A stretch of 47,379 nt of DNA, taken from assembly GCA_002269645.1 (NCBI GenBank), contig NIVC01004393.1, positions 1 through 47,379 of the forward strand, written 5' to 3'. The translations under genes were made by a program, and so were the position numbers. Of this stretch, positions 3,321-42,704 are shown one piece after another (within the stretch, counting starts at the first letter, position 1; each line of letters begins with the position of its first letter). The notes under the pieces were generated by a model. The model had not been told where the DNA came from, made no database searches, and worked only from the letters and a program-made list of their open reading frames with translations. The stretch is from Macrostomum lignano (Eukaryota).

Positions 3321-9235
<5,915 letters not shown>

Positions 9236-10450: not shown

Positions 10451-10763
10451 GTCAGAGACTGTCTATACGGTTCATTTGAAATCTAGCTATCTTTTTTACG
10501 TGTTCATTTATTGAAAAGTACTTCACTCATGAGTTTACGAATATTGAATCGTATTTCAAATGATGAACAGAACTATGCGTTTTTCATAATTGGGTTTACA
10601 AAAATATTTCATTTTTTATTCGAACCCACCTGAACTGTCAAAACGTTTCTTCGAAAACTTCGGCATCCATACGCTCGTATTTAACTGAAGTAGAAGATCT
10701 CTGACGCTTCTGAATGTAAAGAATTTTAGGAGAGACGGTTGTCTGTTATCGGTTATATAGACT

Positions 10764-11449
10764 GTGGGTAAGGAGTGAGGTGGGTAAGGAGTGAGGTGTG
10801 AGGTAGGTGCAGAGTGAGGTGGGTAAGGAGTAAGGTGCGTAAGGAGTGAGGTGGGTAAGGAGTGAGGTGCGTAAGGAGTGAGGTGCGTAAGGAGTGAGGT
10901 GGGTAAGGAGTGAGGTGGGTAAGGAGTGAGGTGGGTAAGGAGTGAGGTGGATAAGGAGTGAGGTGGGTAAGGAGTGAGGTGGGTAAGGAGTGAGGTGGAT
11001 AAGGAGTGAGGTGGGTAAGGAGTGAGGTGGGTAAGGAGTGAGGTGGGTAAGGAGTGAGGTGGATAAGGAGTGAGGTGGGTAAGGAGTGAGGTGGGTAAGG
11101 AGTGAGGTGGATAAGGAGTGAGGTGGGTAAGGAGTGAGGTGGGTAAGGAGTGAGGTGCGTAAGGAGTGAGGTGGGTAAGGAGTGAGGTGGGTAAGGAGTG
11201 AGGTGGGTAAGGAGTGAGGTGGGTAAGGAGTGAGGTGGGTAAGGAGTGAGGTGGATAAGGAGTGAGGTGGGTAAGGAGTGAGGTGGGTAAGGAGTGAGGT
11301 GGATAAGGAGTGAGGTGGGTAAGGAGTGAGGTGGGTAAGGAGTGAGGTGGGTAAGGAGTGAGGTGGGTAAGGAGTGAGGTGGATAAGGAGTGAGGTGGAT
11401 AAGGAGTGAGGTGGGTAAGGAGTGAGGTGGGTAAGGAGTGAGGTGGGTA
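10764..11449. repeat. 16-bp minisatellite GTGAGGTG(G/C)(G/A)TAAGGA, about 43 units, left arm
   Basis: Read directly; ends exactly at the retrotransposon 3' junction. Confidence 0.97.
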
Positions 11450-11541
11450 CTTCTTGACTTAGCTGCAGGGCTGTCCCGGAGGGGACACAGCGGGAAGGCG
11501 CGGGCGCCCATTCCGCTAGTCCCTGAACGGCCGACGCGTCG

Positions 11542-14500
11542 CTATGGACGGAGGGTTGGCGCCGCCCAGGGAGGTCCCCCAGTGTCGCCAGCAGCTATGG
11601 TGCTCTCTGGAAAGGAGAGTTCAGCCCTGCGGGTGGCCCGAAGGTAGCGCATGAGCTGATTAAAGTTTTCGGGTTTGCACGCTTCAGTAATAGATGTGTG
11701 TGGCCCGAGGTAAGTGAGTCTGGCCCGCGTGAAGGCGGGACAGATGCTGACGAAATGCTCAGCGGTTTCGTCACCTGAGTTGCAGAAACTACAGGTGGCG
11801 TTGGTGGCGTTGCCCTGCAGGTACTGGTGCCTGGAGAAGCAGCCGTGACCAGAGAGGGTCATGGTGGCAGCCCGGATGTCTCTGCGCGAGAGGCGCAAGA
11901 GGAGCTTCCGGAGCTGGTGAGAGGGCTGAGGGACAGCGCCTCTGGATTGCCTGCAGTTCGTGCGGTTCGCCCAAGTCGAGCGGTGCTGAGTCCTGATCCA
12001 CGCTTTGATGCGTGAGTCGATGACACAGCCAGGAATCGGGACAAGAGGTTCGGGGCCGAGAGAGGAGCCGGAGGCACCAACTTTTGCAAGGGTGTCAGCC
12101 AACTCATTTCCTCGGATCCCCACATGCCCCGGAACCCACTTAAGGGTAATTTTGTTGGCGGAACCCAACACATTGAGGAGTTTGATACAGTCAAGGACTG
12201 TAGCAGAGTTGGTGCTGCAGCCACTGATGGCGTGCAAGGCAGCTTGGCTGTCCGAATGGAAAATGATGTTCTTACCAGTAACGCCAGTGGCGAGAAGCTC
12301 TGCAGTGCAGGAGCTGATGGCCAGAACTTCATTTTGGAAAACACTGGAGTTGACCCCAGTGTATTGAGCGTGGGTAGCGATGACCCTCCCGTTCAGAAAG
12401 ATTCCAACACCAAAGCCGGTGTTGGCTGACTGCTTAGAACCGTCGGTGTAGCAATGAAGCTCACCAGGGTTCCAATGGTCATTGATGTTATCGCGCGAGT
12501 CGATAGCTACGGAGTAGCGCTGTCTCAGGTTGAGCGTTGAGGCAATGCCATCGGTGAAGACGCGATTGGCCTGACACTCGTTGAGAAAGTTGAGGCACAG
12601 ATCGCTATGCGGGACAAGGTTCCGCTTAGCAGGTGCTCTCATGTAAATGAATTTGACGCCGGCATCAATTAGACGCCGCGTCGTTCTAGCCGCCTCACCC
12701 CTGATGAAGAGGTCAAGAGGCGGAAGATTAAGGAAGGCCCCCATGCCAGCAAAGGGCGTGGACCTGGTGGCGTTGCAGATGAGCCTACACGCTCTGCCTT
12801 GGATCGTGTTGAGCAGGTCTGCATGGCTTTTGACCTGGGTAGCGCTAACCCAGACAACAGAGGCGTACGTAATGGCAGGTCTAACTACGGAAGTATAGAT
12901 CCACCAAAGCCGCTTTGGGGATAGACCCCAAGAAGTGCCAAGTGCTCGTCGGAGCTGGGCCAGGATGGCTGAGGCACGCTTGGCTTTTGCTTTCACGTGG
13001 AGGACCAGTTGAGCCGGTGGTCAAGTATGACCCCGAGACATCTGGTCTGGTGCGCGAAGGCAATATCTCTGCCGTAGAGCTGCAGAGGACGTATGTTCCA
13101 GCGTAGTCTGCTGGTAAACATAATGGCAACGGTTTTGGGCTCAGAGAGTTCCAGACCATTGTCATTGGCCCAGGATTCTGCTTTGCGGATAAAGCTCTGC
13201 ATCAGATCCCTGAGCGTGCTGGGAGACGGTCCTGCCACAATGGCCGTGACGTCATCAGCATACCCGACTTTGAAGACGGGGTCGGGTCGGGAGTCACTCA
13301 AAAGAGCGTCCATGACCAGGTTCCAGAGCGTCGGGGTGAGGACTCCGCCTTGGGGTCCACCCTTACAGACTCTGGTGGAGGCAGTTTGCCCAAGAAGTTG
13401 GGCAGTGACCGTACGGTTGGAGATCATGTACATGATCCACCGTATGAGGGTAGCATGAGCTTTGCGATTTTGAAGGGCCCTCTGAAACGCTTCAAAGATA
13501 ACGTTGTCGAAGGCGCCAACAATGTCAAGAAAGAGAGCCAGAGCGTAACCGTCACCCAGTACCGCCCTTTCAATCTTCTCGACAATCGCATGCAGGGCGC
13601 TGTCAGTCGACCTCCCGGTACGGAAGGCGTGCTGATTATTGCTGAGGGGCATCGCTGTCAGCTCGCAGGACAGCAGCCGCCAGAGAATAAGCCTCTCAGT
13701 GAGCTTAAGCATTGCTGACGTTAAGCTAATAGGCCGGAAGGCCTTGACGCTTTGGTAGTCACCCTTCCCAGGTTTGGGAATAAAGACTACCGAGCTTCAG
13801 TCCAGCATTTGGGAACGTATCCCAGCTGGATAGAGGCCCGCATAAGATTGCGGGTGAGTCTCAGGAACGAGGGTATCTTGGCTGCTTCACGAAGGAGAAC
13901 AGGGTAGATACCATCAGGTCCAGGAGATTTGAAGGGTTTGAAGGTTCTGACCGCACGAGCGATTAGGTCTTCAGTGACAATGCCCGCCGCTAGGGTGGCT
14001 CCATCCATCGAATGGTTGGGCTCCGGTCTAGCAGTAGGTACCCTCGGGAAGAATGTGCTAAGCATATGCTGAAGCACTTCTTCAGGGTCTTTAGTAAGAG
14101 AGCCATCATCTTTTTTGATCATGGCTAATTTGGACATTTTGTCCATTGTAAGGGCCTTGACAAGCCTAGAAGTAGGTCTGTCTTGATCCAATTCATTGCA
14201 GAATTGGCGCCACTTACATTCCTTGGCCTTGCGCACTTCAGATTTGAAATTGCGGGAGGCTTGCCGGAAAAGCTCCATGTCCTCCGGGTTTCCGGTCTTC
14301 ATGGCACGGCGATGAAGGCTTTTGGCCTTCCGCCTGAGTTTCCCCAGCTCCGGGTTCCACCACGGCGCCGAGGTCTTGCCTTTGTAGGCGCGAGCAGGAC
14401 AAGCCGCTTCGTAGGCTTCAATAATGCAACCTGTCAGCGTCTCAGCCATATGATCCACATCCTCGCAGGTCTCAATCGGACGTAAGTCCGTGAGTTCCTG

Positions 14501-15278
14501 CAGGTGCAGATCAAGGGCAGCCTTGTAGGCCGCCCAATCAGTGTTGCGGATATTGCGTCTCCAAGTGATCGGAGACTGGGTTTTAGTGTCCGCGATGTTA
14601 AAGGCGATAAAGCAGTGGTCAGACAGGGAGGGCTCCTCAGACCAGACTCTCCACTCCTCAACTCTGTCAAAGAGTCTTGGGGTAACGAGTGTGGCGTCGA
14701 GGACCTCGGTCCATCTGCCATTATTAAAGGTAGGAGTGCTGCCGCGGTTGCAGAGCATGAGGTTTGTGTTAGAGATGAGGGCCAGAAGCTCCTCTCCTCT
14801 AGTGTTGGTATCTTTGCTGCCCCAGTGCTTGTGGTGCGCGTTGAGGTCGCCCCCTAAGCACAGCTCAGCGTTCTGGGACTCGCAGTACTGCGCGAGGCGC
14901 AGTAAACTCTCAGGAGCAGGGTCTCTGTCGCCTGGGATATAAACCGAGGCAACAAGACACGTACGCGGAGAGAAATGATTAGATTGGATGACACAAAGGT
15001 CTCCATCAGAGAGATCAGTCCTCAGCCAAGCTGGAATGGCTAGCAGCGAGGATAGCCGCTCTAGGGCGGCTGTTCCCCGGGCCACACACATAAAAATCAG
15101 AGTAGCCAGAGGGAATGTTGGGCAACTTACCGTTGCGCATCCAGGGTTCCTGGATCAGGATGAGGCCTGGCCTGTACAGCTCAGCAATCTTCATCAGATT
15201 TACTGACGCAGATACGCAATGCTGTAAATTAATTTGCAGACAGAATGTCGCTCCTTTGGCAGCGTGGAGCTTAGTCAT
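11542..15278 (-). CDS. Retrotransposon ORF2: AP endonuclease, reverse transcriptase, RNase H, CCHC; 3 frameshifts (near 15050, 13790, 12995)
   Basis: APE: LQINLQH, QEPW, GDLNAHH, LDATL, SDH. RT: FRPISLTS (restored frame), QGGVLTP, YADD. RNase H: YTDGS, NEV, SDSQAAL, WVPGH, NELAD. Zinc knuckle: CSFCNSGDETAEHFVSIC. Confidence 0.92.
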
Positions 15279-15317
15279 ACTGTATTAAATGCAATTTCTG
15301 GCTAGAGCCCAGGGCCA

Positions 15318-16821
15318 TCAAGGAGACTTGGACAACAGATCGTCCTCGTCCCAGGCCGCTGGGGCTTGACTGGGAGATGGGAGTTGGTCGACGTCCATGG
15401 CCTCCTCACCCCACCGGCCCCCCAGCAGAGTCCTCAGGCTCCGATGACAGGATGGAGGAAGCTTCCTCATCTGCATCTTTACCTTCAGACCCCACCAAGG
15501 TGGCCGAGGAGAGCTCGGATTCCGAAGACCCGGCCTCGTCCTCAACTCCTTCTCCGACTGGCAGGTTTGGTTCCCGGGGCTTGGCCGGAGCCGTTACCGC
15601 GGTCGCCGAACTGCTGCTAGCAGAGGGGCGAGATGCAGCTTTGGCTTTGGGATCGGCTTGCGCCTTTCCTTGGGCCTTAGACTGCGCCCCGCTCTTGCCG
15701 GAGATGCCGGGGTTGGCAGTAGCCTTCCCTTTGGCAGACTTTCCTCGGCGCATCTTGAGCTTGAGGGCACCCAGCTGGAAAGAGGATCCATTAGGGTACC
15801 GACTCGCCCAAGTGCTGGAAAGGCCGAGGACAATTGAGTTGCCCGTCTCCCCCCTGCGGACTTTGCGGTGATACACCAGTCCACTAGCAGGGAGGTCGGG
15901 GTTCAGACGCAGTAGGACCCGGCGAATAACGTCTGGTCCAGCTGCGGTGCTCTTAGCAGGGACGAAAACCACATAGGGTATCGTCTTTGGACGCTGGCCC
16001 TCGCGAAGAAAAAGAGCTCCGCCAAGGTCAGCATCCAAGGAGACCGTCGGTAGCCGCTGGAGCAGCCGCCGAGCGTCCTCCTCGCTGCTAGGAGCAATAA
16101 GAACGAATGTGCTTCGCAGCACCATCCGCTCAATGCCGATGGAGATTCCCTCCTCGACAGTCAGCTCAATCAGATAGGAGTCAACAGCACTCCACACTTT
16201 TTGAAGCTGATCAGTGGTCCAGTCCTGGTCGCGACCTTGGATGATCACTCCCGGGATTTTGGCCTTGGCCTTCGCCGCAAAGGTAGCTCCCGAAGGAACC
16301 TCCTTGTTGGCAGTGGCCATTTGTTGCGCCGTGGTTTCGGCCTCAGCAGCCGCGGCAGCAGCTCCAGGGAGCGCCGCCGCTGAACTACTGGAGCTTCCAC
16401 CGGCCGGCCCGCCTGGTTGCCTTGGGACTCCAGTCGCTTCAGCATCCATGGTGGACGCCGCCGCTTTGGCCCCCGCAGCTCCCTTCTTGGCCTGCCTTTT
16501 GGCGCGTTGTTTAGCGCGTTTGCGCTCAAGCCGAGCCCGCTGAGCTTCATCGGATCTGCCAGATTTGGCCGGTCCTTTAGGCTCAGAGCTCGCGGTTCCC
16601 TTAGATCCACCAGCGGAGCTGGCAGGTCTTTGGGTATTTTGAGTTTGGTAGCTCTGGTCGGATCTGCCAGCAGAGCCAGCCGGTCCTTCCTTTGCCACAG
16701 TTGAATCAGTCGGTTGGGATCTGCCAGCAGGGCCGGCCGGTCCTTCGGACTGAGGTTGGGGTTTAGAAGGGTCCCCGTCCCTAGAGTTAGCTTGATTATC
16801 CATAGACGGCTCGAAGGCCAT
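15318..16821 (-). CDS. Retrotransposon ORF1 (gag-like position, DUF4780-like core, no CCHC knuckles)
   Basis: ATG at 16821 within ORF 15406..16878. Basic K/R-rich tract, then VIRRVLLRLNPDL...SIVLGL...FQLG, which resembles the LOA ORF1 domain. Two extra G in G-runs near 15415 would extend it to 15318, 39 nt before ORF2. Confidence 0.75.
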
Positions 16822-17340
16822 GATAAAAGGTTGGTGGGCTACCCTCAAAGGGGCGCGGTACCCACCCGGCCGCTCCACCTGACAGGGCAGTAGGCCAAAA
16901 GAACCCTCAAGGCTGGCCCGACACCAGGAGGGGGACCGCTTGCGACCGGACTACTCCCCGGCCTTCCAGCCCATCGGCACGGTCAACACCTTAGGCATTA
17001 GAGAGTACGTTGAGCAGTACCACGGCCTGCAGGTTGGCGAGCCAGACCCGCATACCCAAATTCGGCCGAAGCCACTGGATAGGGTCGCCAGCGCCGGAGC
17101 CCAGTCTGTCCAGCAGCCCTAGGGACTGCCTTGAACACACGCGGGGACGAGTACCCTGGGTCGACTTGCGAGACAGCGTGGGGGGGGGGTCTGCGGCTGC
17201 CAGAGGCAAATAGAGGGTGCAGACCTCCCACCAGCCTTGACCTGCTGAAGATAGGGGCAGGCGTGAAGCATCGCAGACCTTAGCCCATGGGCCTAGTCTG
17301 TCTCATACTTCACTGGCATGCTGAATACGCCTTCGCGTGC

Positions 17341-17559
17341 GTGAGGTGGGTAAGGAGTGAGGTGGATAAGGAGTGAGGTGGATAAGGAGTGAGGTGGATA
17401 AGGAGTGAGGTGCGTAAGGAGTGAGGTGGGTAAGGAGTGAGGTGGATAAGGAGTGAGGTGGATAAGGAGTGAGGTGGGTAAGGAGTGAGGTGGATAAGGA
17501 GTGAGGTGGATAAGGAGTGAGGTGGGTAAGGAGTGAGGTGGATAAGGAGTGAGGTGGGT
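17341..17559. repeat. 16-bp minisatellite, about 13.7 units, right arm
   Basis: Same unit and same GGATAA and GCGTAA variants as 10764-11449. Confidence 0.97.
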
Positions 17560-19185: not shown

Positions 19186-19734
19186 GGGAATATGAGTCGT
19201 GAATACACACAAACATGCATGAAGCGTAATCCTGGTACCATTGCTTCGATAAAATTTTTGCACGTTCAATTAAAATCTCAATTGAGGAAAATTCAAGGTG
19301 CATTCAAGGTGCAAGATGCATATATTCATGCAAAAGTTTGAAACAAAAATATTTCATAGTTTATGGTTTAATCCGGTTGTACCGTGTTTAGCCGGTCATC
19401 AAAACTACAATTCTATAAGATCAAAAGGTGAATTCGACCTGCATGCCGAAGTTTATTCAATAACACGGGGACTTAGACCGAACAATATGTAAGTTCGTTA
19501 TGCGATATACATTGTAAATATAATTAATATCCAACAGCTATGGTCTCAATGTTGCTATTGAAAATTGTGTAGGTTTATGTAAATAATTTTCAGCCTCTAA
19601 ACCTCCATTTACGAGTCGATAGGCAGACGCCCATTAATCTGTTGCATGCCACCCAGCAACGAAAAATTAGAATCCCTAAGCCAGGTTCACTTTTGTTCCA
19701 GACTGCACAGTGCGCGGTGGTCGGTGAGAGCGTC

Positions 19735-22700
19735 ATGACAACCAAGCCGGAAGTCGGTTCCAATTCGGTTCAGACACCGGAACACGAAGCCAGAAAAAAA
19801 AATAATGCACAGAAGCTCACTGCACAAGAGCGAACTCAAGGTCGGACAATTTATTTAATTAAACTGCTTCTCCGACTCAAAAAGATCAAGTTTCTCTGGA
19901 TGGTGATTGTGCTGGTGTCCGCATTTTCCAACTACTTCATCTTCCCTATTGTTGACAGTTGGATGGGAAATCTAGCCCAAACGTTGTCAAAAATTGACGC
20001 AGCAGAATTTTATTGGAGCAGCTTGGTAATGCTGCAGGTGCATAAGTACAGTTTGAACTTTGTTCAACTGATGGAAATGATCAAGGAAAGCCAGGGCAGC
20101 TACAGTGCCGCAGGAAAACTCATTAGAATGTGCAACGGCACCGAGTCCTGCAAAAAAAGCTTATTCTATTCGCTGTACGGCCTCTACAACACCAGCTTGT
20201 ACACTGCCTACGTCGATTTCGCTGAGCCCGATGCCATCCCCAGCATCACGTGTCAACTGGCCTACGGGGCCGATCTTCACTGCCCGTTTTTCGGTCACGT
20301 TGTTTCCGTTACCAAAAGTCCGGTTCTCTACCACGGCGGCAACCGGTTTAAGGAGGTGAACTTTTTCAGTCTGATAACGCACTCGCAGCGAACCCTGAGG
20401 AGCGACTCCAGCTCCATGTGCGGCAGGCACACGAGATTTGACCTCGTGTTCTCAAGGACCATCATGCTGCAAACTATATTAGTGATCGTCTCAACAATGT
20501 TCTACTTTGTAGTTGGGACCATCAGCTGCATTGTGGAGCTGAAGCGGAACGGCTTTCTCGCGATAATGTTTCATAAAGGCTTGCCGATTCGAAGCTACTG
20601 GGCTGCGGTCTGGTCGGTGACAGGCGTGGAGGTCCTGCTGATCTCCTTTCTGCTGTCCTTGTCCATCTTTCTCCAGTGCCCAGGCTACTACAGCATCTCG
20701 TCAATGCTTTTGGCCTTCGTTGCGGTCTTCTTTCAGCTGAGTGGCATGGCCGCGTTGTCGCTACTGCTTACGGTGCTAGAGAAAAGTCTATTTCACATCA
20801 GTCTAACCATGACACTAATTGCCCTGTGCTCATGTTCCTTTGTTCTGATATTACGATTGCTGCTGCACAACGTAACGGTGCTGAAAGTGGCTTTTCTATT
20901 CATAATGCCGCTGTCGCATGTTGGCGAGTTTCTTCAAGCCGTCTTGCTGTCCGTCATTCTGCCAGACAGTGTCACAGCTTATCATTACCTGATCGTACTG
21001 TTTCTCATCGTATTTACTATCGCCACTATCGCGCTGACTTTGTACCTGGACTTTATTCTGCCCTCGGGCAACGGCATGTGTCTGCCATACGGCTACGTCA
21101 CGGATCGGCGCTTCTGGACAGCTGGGCAGCGGGAGCCAAGTCAGTCTGCGGTTGAAGATCCCCTGGCAGGTGAGGAGCTGCCGGACACGCCGAATTTCGA
21201 ACCAATGACGGACGGCTTCAATCCCATTATTCGAATCAGTCAGCTTTGCAGAGTCTATTCGAAGAAATTCTGCCAAAAAACGGACAAGGAGGACGTTATA
21301 GCTTTGAGCAACGTTTCAGGCAAGTAAAGTTTTAACGTGCGCTGAAAATCCTGTTTTGTGTAAGGTAGTCAACTACCATTTTCCCAATAGAAACAATTTC
21401 AAAAAGGGTTGGGTGTGCAATTTTTTTATAATTGCCTCGATAACTCCTCGTATAATCCATTTGCAGCGCATATTTACGAAGGCCAGATTACAGCAATCAT
21501 CGGACACAACGGCTCGGGAAAGACCACCCTGCTAAACATCTTGAACGGTACCGACCAATCAACGTCTGGCAGAGTGTCCGTGAACGGCCTGCTGATGGAG
21601 AACTGGGTCAACCGGCTGCGGCTGAACCGCATCATCGGCATCTGTCCGCAGGAGAACTCGCTGTGCAGCAGCCTCACAGTTGGGCAGACAATCGAGCTGG
21701 CACAGCTTAGCTGCGGCCACAGTCCAGAAACTTGGGAAGAAGAGGCCAGTCGCCTTTTCAAGGCGCTGCGTCTTAGCAGTCATCGGGGCTCAAAAGTCGC
21801 CGAGCTTAGCAGCGGATTCTCAAGAAAGCTTTGCACCGCTGTGGCTCTGATTGGCGACGCCAAGGTGCTGTTCCTGGACGAGCCAACGAACGGTGTTGAT
21901 CCGGTATCGAGAAGGCTGATATGGAGACTGCTGCAGGAGTGCAAGACCAAGTGCTCAATCATTCTGAGCACGCAGGCGATGGACGAAGCCGACACGCTGG
22001 CGGATCGCAAGATTTTCCTGTCGGGCGGATCCGTGCTCTGCGCCGGGTCGTCCCTGTTCCTGAAGAGCGCCTTCGACTGCGGCTTCGACTTCAACGTCAC
22101 ATTGAAGCAGCCTTCGTATGTGCCTCTGCTGATCAAGCAGATTCAGCAGGAATTCGCCAAAGTGAAAGTGAAGAACAGGCTTTCAACTAGCCTGGTTTTT
22201 CACTTGCCGGCCACGGAGATCAACTCGCTATTCGTGTTGGCCCAATCTCTGGAGCGCCGAAGCAACTGGATCACAGCGTTCGGCTTGCTGCAAGCGTCGC
22301 TCTACGACATCTTCATGCGATTGCGGGATCTGCGGCCAAGCGAAGTTGAGAAGCTATTTAAGGAGGGTCGCATTGGACTGCTGAGCGCCGATGAAGAGCC
22401 GGATGAGCTGGAGGACCAATCCAGCAAGCCCAGTCAGTCTCGCCTCGCCGAAATGTTCACAGAAATGGAGAAGAAAATCTGTCCTTCTTTCCTGATGCGT
22501 TTCCGCGCAATTGCGTACCTCAACGTGTTGCGCGTTGTTCGATCCCGAATTCGATTAGCAACCCGAATCATCTCACCAGCTGTGCTCCTGGTACTTTTGC
22601 TAATCCTAGCCGTTGTGGAGCGGGGAGCGAACAATTCGAAAATGGTCTTGCGCAACAACCTTACTAATTTTGGGGAAGCTTTCAGCAAAGGCATTTGCCT

Positions 22701-25700
22701 GTACAGGGAAGGCGATCTCGTTGGTGACATTAACGCCTCTTGGTGCTCCGTTATACTGAGAAGTCATCGCCTGAAGGTCAGAGGGGAAAATTTTGTGAAA
22801 ATGCAAATACCCGATGGTGCACAATTTTACGAATACATTCAGGAGCCAGCTCAACTGGACCGCATCAAAGCAGCATGCAACTCGCCAGAAGATCTTGTCG
22901 GGTGCCCAATAGTTTTCACGGACACGTGGGACGCTTCGCAGTTGAATTCGGCTCGCAAACTGTACGTTGGCTCATTTAGCACGTTTGAGCAGCACAACTC
23001 CTTCAGAGATGCCTCCGTGTCCATGGGCGCTTACACCAAGTTTTCAAGGTTCATAATGGGTAAGAAGCTGGGCCAGGAACATCCAGTTTCAGAAAACGCT
23101 TACAAAGTGATGGCACTGACTGCCTACAACTTTAGAAGTACATTTATTCCCCTGTACGGCGCTTTCGTCCAGCTTATCATTATTGCTATTGTGCCAGCAA
23201 CGTTCCTTGACGACCTCATGGAGGACAGAGACACTAAAATTAAGAACCAGCTGTCTTCAATGGGCGTTGAAGACGTGCAGTATTGGATCATCATGTTTCT
23301 CGTGCACTGGATTCAATACGCCATCATCTACCTTTCCAGTGTCGTTCTAATAGTTGTAATAAACTTTATTGGCTATGGAAACAGCTTTTATCTAGTTGGG
23401 GTTGTACTGCCGACTCTCGTGTTAGGCCTGAGCAACAACCAGCTTTTGGTGTACATCCTTAGCTCTTTGTTAAACAAATCAAACCCGGTAGTGTCCGTGA
23501 TGCACTTGTTCTTCTCAATATTTCTAGTCTTCATCATTTTGGCGGCTCAGCTGGACAATGTCTTCGGAATTGTGCTGATTTCGGTTCTTCCTCCATTCAC
23601 TGCCATCGCACTCACATTCTACGGCACGAAGGCAATTTTCTATACGCTTTCCTACTTTGAACTGAAACGAATCAGCGAAGTAAAGGGGGGAATAAGATTG
23701 GTATACTTTTCCCAGCCGCACGTTTTAAGCTCGCTAATTGCTTTGGCAGTCCACTCGGTTTTGCTGGCAGTCCTGATGGTCTTTCTGGACGAGAGGGCCA
23801 CCATTTCGCAGAAGATCCACAGCCTAATTGGCTCAGCAGAAGCTGACTTCAACAAAGACAGCGACAGCATCGGCTTGAAAGAGGAGACCCGGAGTCTGAC
23901 CAAAGAGCGGAGAAATCCGGACAACATGCTGGAGATCCGGCATCTCTCAGCGGCCTACCAGAGCGGCAACAATGTTGTTAGCGACGTCACCCTGTCCACG
24001 TCTCCTGGCGAGATTTTCGGACTACTCGGCCCGAATGGCGCCGGGAAGAGTACAACCCTGTCTGTCATTGTTGGCGACCTTCGAGCCAAGGAAGGCTGCT
24101 GCGAAGTACAAGTTGTCAATCAGTGGATGGCGAGCCGCCTCGCTGCCAGGCGGGGTCGGATCGGGTACTGCCCGCAGTACAATCCGCAGTACAGCGACGT
24201 CACTGTCAGGTGAGAAGGCCTCGTGTAAAATCCGCCCCTTACAACACTCGCCCCTCACAACAACCTGCCCCTCACAACAACCCGCCCCTCACAACAACCC
24301 GCCCCTCACAACAACCTGCCCCTCACAACAATCCGCACCTCACAACAACCCACTCCAAACCACATCCGCCACAAATAACACCCGCCATAAACAGCACCCA
24401 CCACAAACAACACCCGCCCCTCACAACACTACAAGCCTTACAGCAACAATAATTCGGGTCCAATGTTATGCTAGTGCGTTTCCTTCAGGCATTACAGGGA
24501 CATAGTGTTGTGAACACGATTAATTACTAAATTATGTTATTGATCCGCAGGGAACACCTAGAATTTTACGCTAGCATAATTGGCGCCAAAGAGTCAAAGG
24601 ATGTTATCGACGTACTACTGCAGTGTCTGTGCTTGACAGAACACGAGAAGAAGACTAGCAAGCAGTTGTCATATGGTTTTAAAAGACGCTTATCTTTAGC
24701 TGCCATCCTGCTTGGCAACCCGTGTCTGCTTGTCATAGACGAGGCTTCAACCGGAGTGGACCCCGAGGGCAAGCGCATTCTGTGGAAGGCCATCCAGTCC
24801 TTGGCCAGTCGTCGGAATTCCATTGTGGTCACAACGCACAGCATGGAGGAGGCCGAGGCGCTGTGCCACCGAGTCGGCGTCTTGAACCACGGCCTTCTGG
24901 TGGGCCTGGGCTCCGTTCAAGAGCTCAAGAGCAGGTAAGTGGCCCGAAATAATATTGATAGCAGTGGCCTATCCGAGCTCTCATCTAGCCTGTCCGAATT
25001 CTCATTTGGCCTGTCCGAGTTATAATTTAGCCCGACTGAATTCTCATTTATCCTGTCCGAGTTCTAATTTAGCCTTTTCGAATTCTCATTTATCCTGTCC
25101 GAGTTTTCGTTTAGCGTTTCTGAATTCTCATTTATCCTGTCCGAGTTCTAATTTAGCCTGTCCAAATTCTCATTTCTCTTGTCCGAGTTCTAATTTAGCC
25201 TTTTCGAATTCTCATTTATCCTAAATAAAAGTAAGAATCAACATAAATTGTATTTATTTAGTTTCATTGCCGATGCATTTCGTCCCTTTGCATTAGGACA
25301 TCGTCAGGGTCTTTTTATTTAAGAAACAATTTGAACGAATATTCAGTATATATAGATAGTTGAGAGTACCAAGAGTAGTTGAATTGAGTTTTTAATTGAT
25401 GGTTTAAACTTGTACATAGTAATCAAATTTTTGATACAGTATTGGTTGGGTAAAGTGCATATCAGTTTCAAGCCAGTCCGGTCATTAACAAATCAGCTAA
25501 AAAATTCGGAGTTGACGGCTAGCCATCGCAAGTTGGTTATTTAACGTGGGCTGTTTGGTCTTAATGTACAGGGCTTCTAATAGGCAGAGCATGTGATCTC
25601 TACGCTCGTATTACAAAAATCAATAGCCTTTATCATTTCGTGTGGTTCAGCCTCACAACAAGAATTGCAGGTTAGCAGGTGCTCGTTAATAGCAGAGTTT

Positions 25701-28415
25701 TTTAGCCAATGCTCTCTGACCCTCGTGTATAGGTGTCGTTTAGTTTTTCCTATGTAGGAGATGCTCTGGGGCCCGTGCTATAGAATACTCTTAACTCCTA
25801 AATCTTTAAGAGTGTCCTAACTCTAGCTCCTAGCTGGCTTTTCTGTGCTATAGAATCAAGAGTAAATTTTAAGAGCTAGGAGGCTCCTTAAGGACGTTAG
25901 GAGACTCCTGGGTGAATTTAGGAGAACTCATTAAGGTCCGTGGCATGCTATAGAATTAGGAGAGGAAGTCTAGGAGCTAGGAGCTAGGAGCTGGCTTTTA
26001 GGAGTCATTCTAGGAGCGCGTGTCCCATAGAATGAGAAAATTTCGCTCCTAACTCTTGACTCCTAAGCAAGAGTTCAAGGGCCAATTTTCACTCTTAGAC
26101 AGGATTATAATGTTTTCGGACAGCGAATCGGATTCTGATGAGGAAGGAGTCAATGATAGACGCCGTCGACAGTTTAAGGAATTAATATTTTTGAAGAAGA
26201 TACAGCCGAGAGTGCTATGCGTTTTAGACTTAACGAGATCCAGCTTTCAAGCCTAACAGATAGAATTCGACACAGAATCGAACATCCAACATCAGTGTGT
26301 CCTAACAAATTCCAACATTCCAATATCGCGTCTTGCCACATAGCAATCTTCGCATTCTTAGTTATGGTTGTACTAAACGCACCAAAGAGAACCTCTTTGC
26401 GTGCAGCGACGGCTCTCACAAATGATATTTTTTGAGCAATTTGCATTTTCACTCCTGAGATTCAATTTTTAAGGACCGTAAATTTAGGATTGTGATATAG
26501 CACACAATTCTCTATCATCCTTAAACGATTGCGCAACACTCCTTGAACACACCCCCACTCCTAGGCTGCACTCCTTGCAAGAACTCCTAACTCCTAACTC
26601 CTAACTCCTGATTCTATAGCACACAAAATTCAATCACTCCTTGTCAAGAGTACTCTTGAGTCCTAGCTCCTAACTCTCAACTCCTGATTCTATAGCACAC
26701 AAAATTCAATCACTCCTTGTCAAGAGTACTCTTGAGTCCTAGCTCCTAACTCTCAACTCCTGATTCTATAGCACACAAAATTCAATCACTCCTTGTCAAG
26801 AGTACTCTTGAGTCCTAGCTCCTAACTCCTAACTCCTGATTCTATAGCACGGGCCCCTGGTCCTCATAGCAAACAAATTTATACATGACACCAGCCGCGA
26901 GAGGACGTGGAACCCTGGATTTCAACTTGCAGACGAACTTAGCAATCTTTTCGGTGCGAAACACAGCACGGATTTGAGTGTTTAAGTCTTTACGGAGCAG
27001 CTTTTCTAACTTCTTTTTAAACTCTATAGAACAAACACCAAAGTAAGGCAAAGTGATCAAGGGACATTTATAGGTGGAATCACGAACTTTCATCCGAGTA
27101 GGTTCAGTCAGTTTGTCATTGAGAAAAGAGTTGACAATTTTCATCACAAAGTTCTTAGGATAGCCATTGTAGCTGAGCAGATTGGTGAGGATTTCAACTT
27201 CGTTTTGGAAGTCTCCAAGAGCTGCAAGTGGAAAAAGCCATTTTCGTTTAGCATGTCCGAATTCTCATTTATCCTGTCCGAGTTCTAATTTAGCCCTCAG
27301 AATTCTCATTTATCCTGTCCGAGTTCTAATTTAGCCCTCAGAATTCTCATTTATCCTGTCCGAGTTCTAATTTAGCCTGTCCGAATTCTCATTTATCCTG
27401 TCCGAGTTTTTGTTTAGCATGTCCGAATTCTCATTTATCTTGTCCGAGTTCTAATGTAGCCTTTTCGAATTCTCATTTATCCTGTCCGAGTTTTTGTTTA
27501 GCATGTCCGAATTCTCATTTATCCTGTCCGAGTTCTTATTTAGCCCGTCCGACTTCTCATTTATCCTGTCCGAGTTCTTATTTAGCCTGTCCGAATTCTC
27601 ATTTATCTTGTCCGAGTTCTAATTTAGCCTTTTCGAATTCTCATTCATCCTGTCCGAGTTTTTGTTTAGCCTGTCCGAATTCTCATTTATCTTGTCCGAG
27701 TTCTAATTTAGACTGTCCGAATACTCATTTATCCTGTCCGAATTCTAATATAGCCTGTCCGAATTCTCATTTATCTTGTCCAAATTCTCATTTAGCCTGT
27801 CGAGTTCTCATTTATCCTGTCCGAATTCTAATCTAGCCTGTCCGAATTCTCATTTATCTTGTCCGAATTCTCATTTAGCCTGTCCGAGTTCTCATTTATC
27901 CTGTCCGAATTCTAATCTAGCCTGTCCGAATTCTCATTTAGTTTGAACAAGAGAGGGTAGCCGATTTCAACTCCGCAGCCATCCTTCCTTAAGCCTAAAA
28001 ACCAGCATCTCAACTTAGTTCATCCATGCCCTTTCCAAGGTTCGGCCTGTTCTACACGTTGGAGGTTCTCGTCCGAACCGACCGAGGCAACTCAGCCGCG
28101 GTTGTCGCCACCAAGAGGGCCGTCATAGTCGACGCTGTCTCGAAGAAGTTTCCCAACACCGCGGTGATTGAAGAATTCGCCAACAAAGTGATCTTCTCCA
28201 TCCCAATGTTCAGCATTGTCCGGCTGTCGCTGGCGCTGATGTGGCTGGCGGAGACCCGGGCAGCGATCGGGATCCTGTACTTCTCGTTCTATCAGATGTC
28301 TCTGGACCAGGTGTTCAGCCGGATGATTCTGCTGCACAACCGGCAGTTGTTTGGCAACGCTGACGGGTCTCTGAGTTCGATAGATGACGAATCTGTTGAG
28401 CAGGACGATGGATGA
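19735..28415 (+). CDS. ABCA-subfamily full transporter, paralog 2 (1695 aa, uninterrupted frame)
   Basis: Exons 19735-21319, 21467-24209, 24551-24934 and 28040-28415 total 5088 nt. Intron 1 is GC-AG. Motifs: GHNGSGKTT, LSSGF, LFLDEPTNGVDP, GPNGAGKST, YCPQ, LSYGFKRRLSLA, VIDEASTGVDP, TTHSMEEAEALC. Confidence 0.93.
24228..24430. repeat. 17-bp minisatellite CCCCTCACAACAACCCG, degenerating, in ABCA paralog 2 intron 2
   Basis: Read directly. Confidence 0.88.
24968..25222. repeat. 21-bp minisatellite (TGTCCGAGTTCTAATTTAGCC / TGTCCGAATTCTCATTTATCC), left arm
   Basis: Two alternating variants form a 42-bp higher-order unit; interrupted by the Penelope-like insertion. Confidence 0.93.
25268..25312 (-). 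ncRNA. Minimal type-I hammerhead ribozyme in the Penelope-like element
   Basis: Minus strand reads ACC-CTGACGA-T-GTCC-TAATGCAAAG-GGAC-GAAA-TGCA-TC^GG: complete core, 4-5 bp stem II, palindromic ATGCAT stem III. Stem I has only 2 obvious base pairs. Confidence 0.75.
25769..26856. mobile_element. Non-autonomous PIF/Harbinger DNA transposon (1088 bp, internal deletion derivative)
   Basis: Perfect 18-bp TIR GGGCCCGTGCTATAGAAT; 3-bp TSD CTG (25766-68 and 26857-59). Myb/SANT-like remnant (KEVLFGAFSTTITKNAKIAMWQDAI) on the minus strand; transposase-like N-terminus (MRFRLNEIQL..IRHRIEHPT) on the plus strand. Confidence 0.9.
27241..27941. repeat. 21-bp minisatellite, right arm
   Basis: Same unit family as 24968-25222. 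Confidence 0.95.
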
Positions 28416-29856: not shown

Positions 29857-30580
29857 TGAACTCCGCCCAGTCCTCCTCACGTCACGCTGAACTCCGCCCA
29901 GTCCTCGCTCACGTCACTCTGAACTCCGCCCAGTCCTCGCTCACGTCACTCTGAACTCCGCCCAGTCCTCGCTCACGTCACTCTGAACTCCGCCTAGTCC
30001 TCGCTCACGTCACTCTGAACTCCGCCCAGTCCTCGCTCACGTCACTCTGAACTCCGCCCAGTCCTCGCTCACGTCACTCTGAACTCCGCCCAGTCCTTGC
30101 TCACGTCACTCTGAACTCCGCCCAGTCCTCGCTCACGTCACTCTGAACTCCGCCCAGTCCTCGCTCACGTCACTCTGAACTCCGCCCAGTCCTCGCTCAC
30201 GTCACTCTGAACTCCGCCCAGTCCTCGCTCACGTCACTCTGAACTCCGCCCAGTCCTCGCTCACGTCACTCTGAACTCCGCCCAGTCCTCGCTCACGTCA
30301 CTCTGAACTCCGCCCAGTCCTCGCTCACGTCACTCTGAACTCCGCCCAGTCCTCGCTCACGTCACTCTGAACTCCGCCCAGTCCTCGCTCACGTCACGCT
30401 GAACTCCGCCCAGTCCTCGCTCACGTCACTCTGAACTCCGCCCAGTCCTCGCTCACGTCACGCTGAACTCCGCCCAGTCCTCGCTCACGTCACTCTGAAC
30501 TCCGCCCAGTCCTCGCTCACGTCACGCTGAACTCCGCCCAGTCCTCGCTCACGTCATGCTGAACTCCGCCCAGCCCTCGC
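29857..30580. repeat. 32-bp minisatellite CTGAACTCCGCCCAGTCCTCGCTCACGTCACT, about 22 units
   Basis: Near-identical units with no spacers; the rightmost unit is the coding end of the lectin gene. Confidence 0.97.
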
Positions 30581-33036: not shown

Positions 33037-39573
<6,537 letters not shown>

Positions 39574-40882: not shown

Positions 40883-42704
40883 ATGCTCAACAAATCAATC
40901 CCAACGTTCTCCTCAACACAGTCGCTGGGCTGCCAGGTGTTGCACAGGCTCACTAGACGAGCAACGTTTGTCGCTGCCGTCGGCTGCATGCTGCTCGTCA
41001 TAATTCTGTTCTCCGCGCTCAAACTGACCCGGCGAACCGAGCCGCGGGTGGTCGATCTGGAACTCTCACGGAGAATCGCTGAACAGCTGCGACCGGACCA
41101 GGACGATCTGGCCGCCATCGGGCAGCACGTGTTCAGCGCCTACTTTGACACCCGAGCTACGCTTGGAAATCGAAAATACGTCCGCATCGTAGCCGTGCTG
41201 GATATCAAAGCCTATGAGAGTGACTTTATTTGCCAGTTTCTGCACGAGTCCGGCCGCATGTCGTTTAGCACGGTTGCCAGAAAGTCGGCAATCGGAGCTG
41301 GCATGGGGTACAACAATCACTACTATAAGGAGTTCGTGCTGTCCTGTCCAATCGGTAATGACACCAGATCTGCCACCTTTGTCTTTGTTCAGACTGGAGA
41401 CGCCGCTCAGCGATCGCAGGTGCTGCGGGTCAGACACAATCCGCTGTCTCTGGGAAAGCAGCCAGCTGATCAGCAACAAATCATCAACTGCGTGTCCGTG
41501 ACGTTTGGCAATCCAAACGAGCACCGGCTGATTGAATGGCTGGAAGCCCAGCGCCTACTCAAAATGGACAAAGTCGAACTGCATTTCTATCATGTATTGA
41601 ACAAAAACTTTGAAGCCGTGGCCCAGTCTTACAGCGCCGAAGGCTTTTTGAACGTGAGAAAAATCGGCTGCCCGTTTTGCGATCCGGCGGACAGCGATTT
41701 AAAGCTGCTGCTGATGTCTCCCGCCATCAACCAGTGCCTCTACGAGGTGAGGATTCTTTAGAATAAAGATCAGAGTTTTACTCTTTAGGTTTGGATTTTT
41801 TGAATGCGCGGCCACCCATGCATCTGGGGCTTGTTCACAGGTTGTAGAGTAGAGTAGCCTCAGATTGTGGGCCGATTTCGCCGAAGGAGTTGTGCCAGTG
41901 TCTGCAACCCTCCTGGGTATATTTATTGATACCTCGTGAGTTTCGGGCCCACTGTTAACTAGCTTCACTGGTTTGTAGACTTTGTGATTCCGTAATTATA
42001 CAATACAATTAAGATTGAAAGTATGGCCACTGAAACCTGCCAGTAGTGAGATACGAAAACGCACTAATCGGAAAAACTACCAACTCCAAATTTGCCCGAG
42101 TACACAAACTAAATGTACGTGCAAAAGGTACCGGAGACAGGCGACAGAGGCCATGAACTTGTCCGCAAAACAAAACTTGAATGCGCATTTTCAGAACCTG
42201 GGCGGTTACAAGTACACGGCAGTGTTCGACCTCGACGAGATCATCGTGCCGCAGCAGCACCCCGACTATCCCTCCATGCTGGCAGCCTTGGAGAAGGTCA
42301 GCACCAGCTCGTTCGCCTTCAGAAACTGGTACCACTTCAACGAGCTCGGAGAGGACTCGACAGTGGATTCCAGGATGCACATGCTGCGACATCCCTACCG
42401 AACGAAAGAGGAGAGCCAGATTGGCTATTCGGCAAAGTCAATCCACAGATCCTGCTGCGTCGTGGCGCTGCAAAATCACTTCAGCTGGGAGGACGCCCCC
42501 AAGCCGAACACGAGGATGAGCATCTACCACGTGGCTGTGGACATCGGGGTCAACGAGCACTATAAAAAGTGCCACTTTTATCCGAACGAGTGCAAAGCCA
42601 TGACCGCAGTGAAAGATCGAAAGGACGGTTCCAGGCTGAAAAAGCTGATTGGGAAAAGGCTGAAGGCTGAATTTCGAAGCAAGGAGCGCCAAGTTTTTAG
42701 TTGA
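40883..42704 (+). CDS. Glycosyltransferase family 92 (DUF23-type), type II membrane protein, 457 aa
   Basis: Exons 40883-41746 and 42195-42704 (phase 0, GT-AG). N-terminal TM segment; AYFDTR, CVSVTFG, LIEWLEAQRLL, INQCLY, FDLDEIIVP (DxD) and HY..C motifs. Confidence 0.85.

What the first reader, a model, noticed from the sequence alone, without database searches (positions are those of the whole stretch)
10764..17559. LOA/R1-group retrotransposon inside a G-rich 16-bp minisatellite: candidate minisatellite-targeting element
Seen: the element splits one array (about 43 + 14 units; both arms share the same variants, so the array probably predates the insertion) and has a 12-bp TSD GTGAGGTGGGTA (modulo 16). 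The implied nicks are GGGTA^AGG on the G-rich strand and CCTCAC^TCC on the C-rich strand, and the element's sense strand is the C-rich one. Known: related R1-clade elements are sequence-specific (rDNA, telomeric TRAS/SART, microsatellite-targeting Waldo). As I recall, TRAS1 endonuclease nicks TT^AGG and CC^TAA, the same geometry. Inference: possibly an undescribed element specialised on a dispersed telomere-like minisatellite as a safe haven. One copy cannot prove specificity.
Basis: partly seen in the sequence, partly recalled or inferred. Interest (0 to 1): 0.8.

Follow-up and report, generated by a model that had tools for sequence, protein, structure and literature searches.

The report
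Flatworm LINE inserted in a minisatellite
A full-length R1/LOA-type retrotransposon of the flatworm Macrostomum lignano really does sit inside a 16-bp minisatellite with a clean 12-bp duplication, but in a genome that is about 15% tandem repeats this is most likely an ordinary insertion rather than a minisatellite-hunting element.

Summary
One array of GTGAGGTGGGTAAGGA is split into 42.4 units (10764-11449) and 13.6 units (17341-17557). The insert is 5,891 bp (11450-17340), sense on the minus strand, flanked by an exact 12-bp duplication, GTGAGGTGGGTA.

The insert is a full-length APE-type LINE. It has ORF1 and an ORF2 with APE, RT, RNase H and a CCHC motif; ORF2 carries three 1-nt frameshifts. 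Its endonuclease matches TRAS1 best among solved structures (3.5e-16), then R1Bm; L1 is not detected. The host is Macrostomum lignano.

Minisatellite targeting is untested. No searchable collection holds the M. lignano genome, so no second 3' junction of this family could be read. The indirect evidence leans against targeting:
- Tandem repeats cover 17% of this window and about 14.5% of the published genome, so one LINE in an array is expected often.
- Four relatives (44-58% aa identity) that share the conserved 3'-UTR stem have unrelated 3' flanks and (AAGTCA)n-like or poly(A) tails.
- Other M. lignano copies lie in gene models built around unrelated genes, and none carries array-encoded peptide.
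- The similarity to the TRAS1 nick site is only ^AGG and C^T, and tail/target microhomology blurs the nick position by about 2 nt.

Verdict: a new member of a known kind, of low interest unless a genome-wide junction census shows otherwise.

The parts
10764..11449 (+). Left arm of the 16-bp minisatellite (GTGAGGTGGGTAAGGA; 42.4 units). It lies downstream of the element's 3' end.
   Evidence: TRF; pattern scan 53 hits against 0.02 expected; sequence
11438..11449 (+). Left copy of the 12-bp target-site duplication GTGAGGTGGGTA. Its 3'-OH end is the inferred primer for reverse transcription.
   Evidence: Direct reading
11450..17340 (-). Full-length non-LTR retrotransposon (5,891 bp) of the I group, R1/LOA-like, from Macrostomum lignano.
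   Evidence: ORFs, Pfam, PDB, homologues. The 5' end aligns with the start of the related Logan contig L096. No second copy in the window.
11450..11541 (-). 3' UTR (92 nt). It has a conserved closing stem, CAGGG(A/G)...CCCTG, an inner hairpin, and a terminal ...CCCTGCAGCTAAGTCAAGAAG. There is no poly(A).
   Evidence: Sequence; motifs shared with L001, L096 and L098; consensus fold of six 3' UTRs
11542..12996 (-). ORF2 segment 4: RT thumb/linker, RNase H domain, and a C-terminal C-x2-C-x8-H-x4-C motif (CSFCNSGDETAEHFVSIC).
   Evidence: Pfam RNase_H 2.4e-11; translation; 55% identical to P0001
12993..13712 (-). ORF2 segment 3: reverse transcriptase core, including YADD. A 1-nt frameshift near 12996 separates it from segment 4.
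   Evidence: Pfam RVT_1 6.2e-24; three-frame translation of the break
13787..15091 (-). ORF2 segment 2: C-terminal half of the APE endonuclease plus the linker to the RT. A 1-nt deletion near 13787 breaks the frame before SSVVFIPKPGK.
   Evidence: Pfam Exo_endo_phos_2 2.8e-21; TRAS1 EN hit; break
15015..15278 (-). ORF2 segment 1: start codon and N-terminal part of the APE endonuclease. A frameshift near 15030 joins it to segment 2.
   Evidence: Translation. After joining the frames, the whole domain aligns to TRAS1 EN residues 22-242 at 3.5e-16.
15406..16878 (-). ORF1 (open; the first ATG is about 16821). It has low-complexity basic and acidic ends and a conserved core of about 180 aa. It has no CCHC zinc knuckle and no Pfam match.
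   Evidence: Translation; Pfam none; core 38% identical to ORF1 of L096; no PDB match
16879..17340 (-). 5' UTR. The motif GGCCCATGGGCTAAGGTCTGCGATGC is conserved with L096.
   Evidence: Sequences
17341..17352 (+). Right copy of the 12-bp target-site duplication.
   Evidence: Direct reading
17341..17557 (+). Right arm of the same minisatellite (13.6 units). It lies upstream of the element's 5' end.
   Evidence: TRF; pattern scan

Best explanation
A full-length copy of a moderately young M. lignano LINE family was inserted by ordinary target-primed reverse transcription into a pre-existing intergenic minisatellite of about 55 units. The family belongs to the I group and is R1/LOA-like, with ORF1 and an ORF2 carrying APE, RT, RNase H and CCHC. 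The minisatellite lies between two ABCA-transporter paralogues.

Inferred steps:
1. The endonuclease nicked the G-rich strand at about GGGTA^AGGA.
2. The freed 3'-OH primed cDNA synthesis on the element RNA. The RT probably recognises that RNA through the conserved 3'-UTR stem-loop and its AAGTCA-type tail.
3. A second nick 12 bp away on the C-rich strand (CCTCAC^TCC) produced the GTGAGGTGGGTA duplication.

Landing in an array reflects the abundance of tandem repeats in this genome, not a dedicated specificity for this 16-mer. What the sequence shows directly: the element's identity and completeness, the split array and the duplication. What is inferred: the order of the nicks, the role of the 3' UTR, and the lack of specificity.
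For: Anatomy of the insertion:
- Array, duplication and orientation.
- Domains.
- EN closest to TRAS1 (3.5e-16 over 216 residues), then R1Bm (1.6e-4).
- M. lignano origin, and further copies at 84-100% aa identity sitting in chimeric gene models with annexin, WSC, START, GAE, DUF3480 and peptidase A1 parts.

Chance expectation:
- Tandem repeats cover 17.1% of the window, or 19.5% without the element.
- They cover 13.12% of the Mlig_3_7 assembly, plus 1.34% simple repeats. LINEs make up 1.66% of 764 Mb (PMC5730564). Many LINE copies should therefore lie in arrays by chance, and this case was picked because it does.

Relatives that share the 3'-UTR structure have unrelated 3' flanks:
- L096 (58% aa)...AAGTCAAAGT|GACCTTGACTATATTG, in unique sequence that carries an ORF and has no tandem repeat.
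- L001 (55%): the tail, then T6, then a 53-bp (TTGTAGC)n stretch.
- L097 and L099 (46% and 44%): poly(A) tails and unrelated flanks.

No protein in 5.8 billion carries the array-encoded peptide together with M. lignano or TE sequence.
Against: - Only one 3' junction of this particular family was readable, so strict or partial specificity is not excluded.
- Most R1-clade families are target-specific (PMC1919474), and the EN is most like TRAS1.
- The element has no poly(A) and has clean junctions at both ends of a full-length copy, as site-specific R1-clade elements do.
- One relative (L001) also ends about 10 bp from a short tandem repeat.
Confidence: 0.72

Rival explanations
1. One reading: the family is sequence-specific for this 16-bp minisatellite. 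Its endonuclease would recognise the unit and nick GGGTA^AGGA and CCTCAC^TCC. The dispersed arrays would then serve as a safe haven, as telomeric repeats do for TRAS/SART or microsatellites do for Waldo and Mino.
For: - A full-length copy sits inside the array with a precise 12-bp duplication and no poly(A).
- The EN is most similar to the telomere-repeat-specific TRAS1 EN.
- The R1 clade is mostly target-specific (PMC1919474; PMC4640811).
- Both nicks share ^AGG and C^T with the TRAS1 sites (PMC2868851).
Against: - There is one copy only, and it was selected because it lies in an array. The chance rate is about 15%.
- No other array of this unit was seen anywhere that could be searched.
- Sister lineages with the same 3'-UTR structure have unrelated flanks.
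- Seven M. lignano gene models contain pieces of the family next to unrelated genes, and none contains the open array-encoded peptide.
- The nick position is uncertain by about 2 nt.
Confidence: 0.07
2. Loose preference: the endonuclease favours a short motif (for example GT(A/C)^ or ^AGG) or unusual DNA such as G-rich, G-quadruplex-prone or slipped tandem repeats. Copies would then be enriched in arrays without being tied to one sequence.
For: - Two of the four readable 3' junctions in this lineage, the window and L001, lie in or next to tandem repeats.
- The bases before the inferred first nick are GGGTA (window) and AGGTC (L096).
Against: - The sample is four junctions, from different families and different organisms.
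- L096, L097 and L099 have no repeat at the junction.
- The junction positions are blurred by tail/target microhomology.
Confidence: 0.14
3. Assembly artefact: a long-read assembly of a repeat-rich, partly duplicated genome joined a LINE copy into an array. Separately, the three frameshifts could be consensus errors rather than real mutations.
For: Mlig_3_7 was built from PacBio data with Canu, and the authors describe it as difficult and redundant (PMC5730564). ORF2 has three single-nucleotide frame breaks in an otherwise open 1,246-codon reading frame.
Against: A mis-join would not produce an exact 12-bp duplication with both arms in one orientation and element ends that match an independent relative. 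The frameshift at 13787 is not in a homopolymer. Which assembly the window comes from is not known.
Confidence: 0.04
4. The array belongs to the element or was generated by it, as a 3' tail repeat or a post-insertion expansion of the duplicated target.
For: Relatives carry short tandem tail repeats of AAGTCA type.
Against: - The tail repeat is unrelated to the 16-mer.
- The array lies on both sides of the element, in phase, and shares rare variants (GCG units) between the arms.
- The relatives' termini lack it.
Confidence: 0.03

Closest known systems
TRAS1 / SART1 (Bombyx mori telomeric-repeat-specific LINEs, R1 clade)
   Same: - APE-type endonuclease at the N-terminus of ORF2; TRAS1 EN is the best solved-structure match (3.5e-16).
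- Insertion into a G-rich tandem repeat.
- First nick 5' of AGG and second nick at a C^T step (PMC2868851).
   Different: - TRAS1 and SART1 are shown to be specific by hundreds of copies and by in vitro cleavage; here there is one copy.
- The target unit is 16 bp and internal, not a 5-bp telomeric repeat.
- The stagger is 12 bp (mod 16) rather than 1 bp (mod 5), by my own calculation.
- This element encodes an RNase H domain and its ORF1 has no CCHC knuckles. That TRAS1/SART1 ORF1 has knuckles is my own knowledge, not tested here.
R1 (28S rDNA-specific LINE, e.g. R1Bm)
   Same: - Two-ORF APE LINE.
- R1Bm EN is the second-best structure match.
- No poly(A).
- Defined target-site duplication of similar size: 14 bp for R1Bm (PMC1919474) against 12 bp here.
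   Different: R1 has one fixed site in a multicopy gene. The similarity to R1Bm EN is weak (1.6e-4, and only the C-terminal half aligns).
Repeat-targeting APE LINEs of the R1 clade (Waldo, Mino, Kibi, Koshi; Kojima & Fujiwara 2004, cited in PMC4640811)
   Different: Those targets are 2-4-bp microsatellites, and the specificity rests on many copies. A 16-bp minisatellite target has not been described to my knowledge, and it is not demonstrated here.
LOA clade (LOA, Bilbo, TRIM, Lian, CiLOA)
   Same: [quoted passage not shown] LOA is the clade closest to R1 (PMC2790886). LOA elements are generally not site-specific (own knowledge), which fits the unrelated flanks of the relatives.
   Different: No RT phylogeny against reference LOA and R1 sequences could be run, so clade assignment stays open.

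Membership tests
APE-type non-LTR retrotransposon, I group (Ingi, I, Nimb, Loa, R1, Tad1, Loner, Outcast) | [quoted passage not shown] | tested here: met
   Pfam Exo_endo_phos_2 2.8e-21, RVT_1 6.2e-24, RNase_H 2.4e-11, in that order on the minus strand
R1 clade | RT-domain phylogeny places the element inside the clade | not testable with these tools
   No reference R1, LOA or other clade RT sequences were available. Database hits carry no clade names.
R1 clade | Endonuclease more similar to R1-clade ENs than to other LINE ENs | tested here: met
   TRAS1 EN 3.5e-16, R1Bm EN 1.6e-4, and L1 EN absent even at E<=10. No LOA-clade EN structure exists, so this does not separate R1 from LOA.
R1 clade | ORF1 with CCHC zinc knuckles (typical rather than strictly defining; own knowledge) | tested here: not met
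   The 490-aa ORF1 translation has no Cys/His knuckle and no Pfam hit. Only a core of about 180 aa is conserved with L096 ORF1.
Target-specific LINE (any clade) | Most copies sit at the same target sequence, in the same register and orientation | not testable with these tools
   There is one copy in the window. No M. lignano genome is in the searchable collections. Relatives at 44-58% aa identity have unrelated flanks, but they belong to different families.
Target-specific LINE (any clade) | The target is a multicopy, dispersed sequence | tested here: inconclusive
   The 16-mer occurs only at this locus in the window. It is absent from the viral and prokaryote collections, and from all predicted proteins as its open-frame peptide. 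None of these sample the M. lignano genome.
LOA clade | [quoted passage not shown] | tested here: met
   The feature is shared with other I-group clades, so it is necessary but not sufficient.

The most novel reading that the evidence does not exclude
This M. lignano family is the first APE-type LINE specialised on a 16-bp minisatellite. A TRAS1-like endonuclease would read the unit. Alternatively, read-through transcripts from array-resident copies would anneal to the nicked array and home in the same register, using dispersed arrays as a safe haven.
Probability: 0.07. Interest if true: 0.6.

Novelty: new member of a known kind. Interest (0 to 1): 0.22.

Why it matters
If the family were truly minisatellite-specific, it would extend the known target range of R1-type endonucleases from rDNA, telomeric repeats and microsatellites to a 16-bp unit. 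It would also offer a new sequence-reading APE nuclease to study.

As the evidence stands, the value is modest. The locus is a clean, full-length reference copy of an RNase-H-bearing, TRAS1-like LINE lineage in a free-living flatworm. It has a conserved 3'-UTR stem-loop and an unusual (AAGTCA)n-type tail. It also shows why a single LINE inside an array is uninformative in a genome that is about 15% tandem repeats.

Tried and rejected
- **Second copy in the window:** blastn of the element against the window found only itself.
- **Exact-protein look-up of the window ORF2 C-terminal segment:** not on record.
- **Metagenome scan with a two-part 3'-UTR pattern:** 0 hits. It did not even find L001, so that collection does not hold such contigs.
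- **Metagenome scan with a protein profile (A1):** 80 loci, all at or below about 33% identity apart from one 50% match over a short fragment (L067). These are other LINE lineages and were not used.
- **Viral contigs with the 16-nt 3' motif:** 14 hits, taken to be chance matches on viral contigs. The array pattern gave 0 hits in viral and in prokaryote genome contigs.
- **Protein search with the ORF that reads from the 3' UTR through the array:** this was meant to catch other TE/array junctions in gene models. It gave three weak, unrelated ENA hits.
- **Chimeric M. lignano gene models as a source of 3' flanks:** all leave the element at the same cryptic GTGAG donor (...GDETAEHF|), so the flank is never seen.
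- **P0023, one of the two closest relatives (58%):** the DNA was not retrievable.
- **TIRs or shared repeats between the array's outer flanks:** none beyond the TGTC microsatellite. I therefore rejected the idea that the array is internal to a larger element.
- **Anzai et al. 2001 (TRAS1 EN):** not held. The nick sites were taken from PMC2868851 instead.
- **M. lignano telomere repeat:** could not be confirmed from the library. 'Telomere-like' therefore rests only on GGGTAAGG versus GGGTTAGG.
Full report

Yes.
- Tandem Repeats Finder reports a 16-bp array at 10764-11449 (42.4 copies, 94% matches) and again at 17341-17557 (13.6 copies, 95% matches).
- The unit GTGAGGTGGGTAAGGA, allowing 2 mismatches, occurs 53 times. 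All are on the + strand and all are in those two blocks. Dinucleotide-preserving shuffles predict 0.02.
- The left arm ends ...GGAGTGAGGTGGGTA and is followed by CTTCTTGACTTAGCTGCAGGG. The right arm is preceded by ...CCTTCGCGTGC and starts GTGAGGTGGGTAAGGA.
- GTGAGGTGGGTA therefore occurs at 11438-11449 and at 17341-17352. The bases beyond each copy break the array pattern, so the duplication is exactly 12 bp (modulo 16).
- The two arms share the three unit variants GGG, GGA and GCG, at 27/8/3 on the left and 4/8/1 on the right. This fits one pre-existing array of about 55 units that was split.
- The insert is 5,891 bp and has no second copy in the window.

**2. What is the insert?**

All long ORFs lie on the minus strand.

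ORF1 (15406-16878) is open.
- It has no Pfam or PDB match and no CCHC knuckle.
- A core of about 180 aa is 38% identical to ORF1 of a related element, L096.

ORF2 is in four pieces: 15015-15278, 13787-15091, 12993-13712 and 11542-12996.
- The pieces carry Exo_endo_phos_2 (2.8e-21), RVT_1 (6.2e-24) and RNase_H (2.4e-11).
- A C-x2-C-x8-H-x4-C motif lies near the C-terminus.
- The breaks are three single-nucleotide frameshifts near 15030, 13787 and 12996. Otherwise the frame of about 1,246 codons is open.
- They may be real mutations or consensus errors of a long-read assembly.

When the endonuclease frames are joined, the domain aligns over 216 residues to TRAS1 EN (1wdu, 3.5e-16). It aligns more weakly to R1Bm EN (2ei9, 1.6e-4). 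Human L1 EN is not detected even at E<=10.

[quoted passage not shown] All known LOA elements have it, and LOA is the clade closest to R1 (PMC2790886). 'LOA/R1-group' is thus a fair label. I could not run an RT phylogeny against reference elements, so the clade is not settled.

**3. Host and family**

The closest named proteins are Macrostomum lignano gene models, at 84-100% aa identity over TE-derived segments.
- These models are chimeras of TE pieces with annexin, WSC, START, GAE, DUF3480, peptidase A1 and other parts.
- The family therefore has several copies in different gene neighbourhoods.
- At least two further related families exist in M. lignano: P0004 at 55% and P0129 at 51%.

In the window the array lies in unique intergenic DNA between two diverged ABCA-type transporter paralogues, 3321-8066 and 19642-24213.

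**4. Termini and relatives**

The element's 3' end reads ...CCCTGCAGCTAAGTCAAGAAG|TACCCACCTCAC, with no poly(A). Five relatives with readable 3' regions were recovered:

| Locus | Source | aa identity | 3' end and flank |
|---|---|---|---|
| L001 | JGI metagenome | 55% | ...CCCTGCAGCTAAGTCAAAGTAAGTCAGTAAGTCAACAC, then T6, then a 53-bp (TTGTAGC)n stretch |
| L096 | Logan ERR14788467 | 58% | ...CCCTGCAGCTAAGTCAAAGT\|GACCTTGACTATATTG..., then 530 bp of non-repetitive, ORF-bearing sequence |
| L098 | Logan | 46% | Contig ends inside an AAGTCAAGTCAA tail |
| L097 | ENA | 46% | Poly(A), then an unrelated flank |
| L099 | ENA | 44% | Poly(A), then an unrelated flank |

All six 3' UTRs share a closing stem, CAGGG(G)...CCCTG, around an inner hairpin, placed just before the tail. 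Two of the 15 predicted pairs show compensatory changes. That is weak support, but it fits an RT that recognises its own 3' UTR.

The L096 contig starts within a base or two of the position matching window base 17340, and it shares the 5'-UTR motif GGCCCA(A/T)GGGCTAAGGTCT. The window copy is therefore full length.

The tail repeat is AAGTCA-like, so the TA at the junction could be tail rather than target. The first nick is known only to about 2 nt.

**5. Is the element minisatellite-specific?**

The decisive test is the 3' flanks of other copies of this family. It could not be run because no searchable collection contains the M. lignano genome.
- The exact-protein look-up failed.
- A specific 3'-UTR pattern found nothing in the metagenome contigs.
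- A profile scan returned only distant lineages.
- The viral and prokaryote collections hold neither the array nor the element.
- The ORF that reads from the 3' UTR into the array is open on the element's sense strand. It has no counterpart among 5.8 billion proteins.

The remaining evidence is indirect and leans against specificity.

(a) The base rate is high.
- Tandem repeats cover 17.1% of this window, or 19.5% once the element is removed.
- They cover 13.12% of the Mlig_3_7 assembly, plus 1.34% simple repeats. LINEs occupy 1.66% of 764 Mb (PMC5730564).
- Many LINE copies must therefore lie in arrays by chance, and this one was flagged because it does.

(b) The four relatives with readable flanks show four unrelated sequences. 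Only one of them is next to a short repeat.

(c) None of the chimeric gene models includes array-encoded peptide.

(d) The TRAS1 analogy is thin.
- The shared features are only ^AGG and C^T. AGG follows 2 of 16 positions in the unit.
- By my own calculation from the published nick sites, the stagger also differs: 12 bp (mod 16) here against 1 bp (mod 5) for TRAS1.

In favour of specificity:
- The TRAS1-like EN.
- The statement that most R1-clade families are target-specific (PMC1919474).
- The absence of poly(A).
- The clean, full-length insertion.

**6. Most likely mechanism**

This is ordinary target-primed reverse transcription.
1. A first nick on the G-rich strand at about GGGTA^AGGA frees a 3'-OH.
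2. That end primes cDNA synthesis on the element RNA, which the RT selects through the 3'-UTR stem-loop and tail.
3. A second nick 12 bp away on the C-rich strand gives the GTGAGGTGGGTA duplication.
4. The 5' end is joined without truncation.

Shown: the structure, the duplication and the orientation. Inferred: the order and exact position of the nicks, and the role of the 3' UTR.

I give 0.72 to an untargeted insertion, 0.14 to a loose motif or structure preference, 0.07 to true 16-mer specificity, and the rest to artefact or element-derived array.

**7. Novelty and verdict**

This is a new member of a known kind: an apparently undescribed flatworm LINE family of the R1/LOA type, inserted into a minisatellite. 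Interest is low (0.22). It would rise to about 0.6 if a junction census showed that most copies abut TACCCACCTCAC in one register.

Noticed in passing
window 3321-8066 and 19642-24213 (+): Two ABCA-type ABC-transporter paralogues in tandem. They have ABC_tran and ABC2_membrane_3 domains and very long uninterrupted ORFs of 923 and 934 aa. They show no nucleotide-level similarity to each other at E<=1e-5. The LINE and its array lie between them.
   Followed up: partly
whole window: Very high density of tandem arrays: 23 distinct arrays cover 8,098 bp, or 17% of the window. Examples are (CAT)233 at 36167-36873, (TGTC)149 at 8168-8763, its reverse-complement type (ACAG)109 at 34862-35296, a 32-mer x22.7 at 29857-30580 and a 30-mer x28.9 at 38460-39323.
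   Followed up: partly
window 24967-25222 and 27240-27941: The same 21/42-bp unit (GCCTGTCCGAATTCTCATTTA...) forms two blocks separated by about 2 kb of non-array sequence (25223-27239). That sequence contains a 76-bp x3.5 repeat at 26585-26850. This may be a second array split by an insertion. No duplication or coding capacity was identified.
   Followed up: partly
window 11450-11541 (-); L001 2417-2503; L096 5849-5965; L098 4259-4364; L097 5093-5197; L099 4135-4234: The 3'-UTR architecture is conserved across 44-58% diverged elements: an outer stem CAGGGG/CCCCTG and an inner GC hairpin with some compensatory changes. After it comes either an (AAGTCA)n-like tail or poly(A). This is probably the RT recognition element.
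   Followed up: partly
window 10753-11511 (-): A 252-aa ATG-initiated ORF starts in the LINE 3' UTR and reads through the whole left arm as a (THLTPYPPHSLPTSLL)n peptide. The C-rich strand of the array is open in all frames. It is almost certainly not a gene, and it has no homologues.
   Followed up: yes
window 11716-11760 (-), codons ...GDETAEHF|VS: Several M. lignano gene models (P0002, P0011, P0012, P0090) leave the element within about 10 codons of the same point. In P0002 and P0012 the exit is exactly at the GTGAGC that encodes VS, which looks like a cryptic splice donor. This suggests LINE copies are exonised or mis-annotated into host genes.
   Followed up: no
window 42015-42704 (+): An ORF with a glycosyltransferase family 92 domain (7.2e-13), probably an exon of a host gene.
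   Followed up: no
P0129 (M. lignano protein): A third related LINE family (51% aa). Its 5' UTR, ORF1 and ORF2 are fused in frame behind a subtilisin/proprotein-convertase-like (Peptidase_S8) gene model, so a copy lies within or next to that gene.
   Followed up: no
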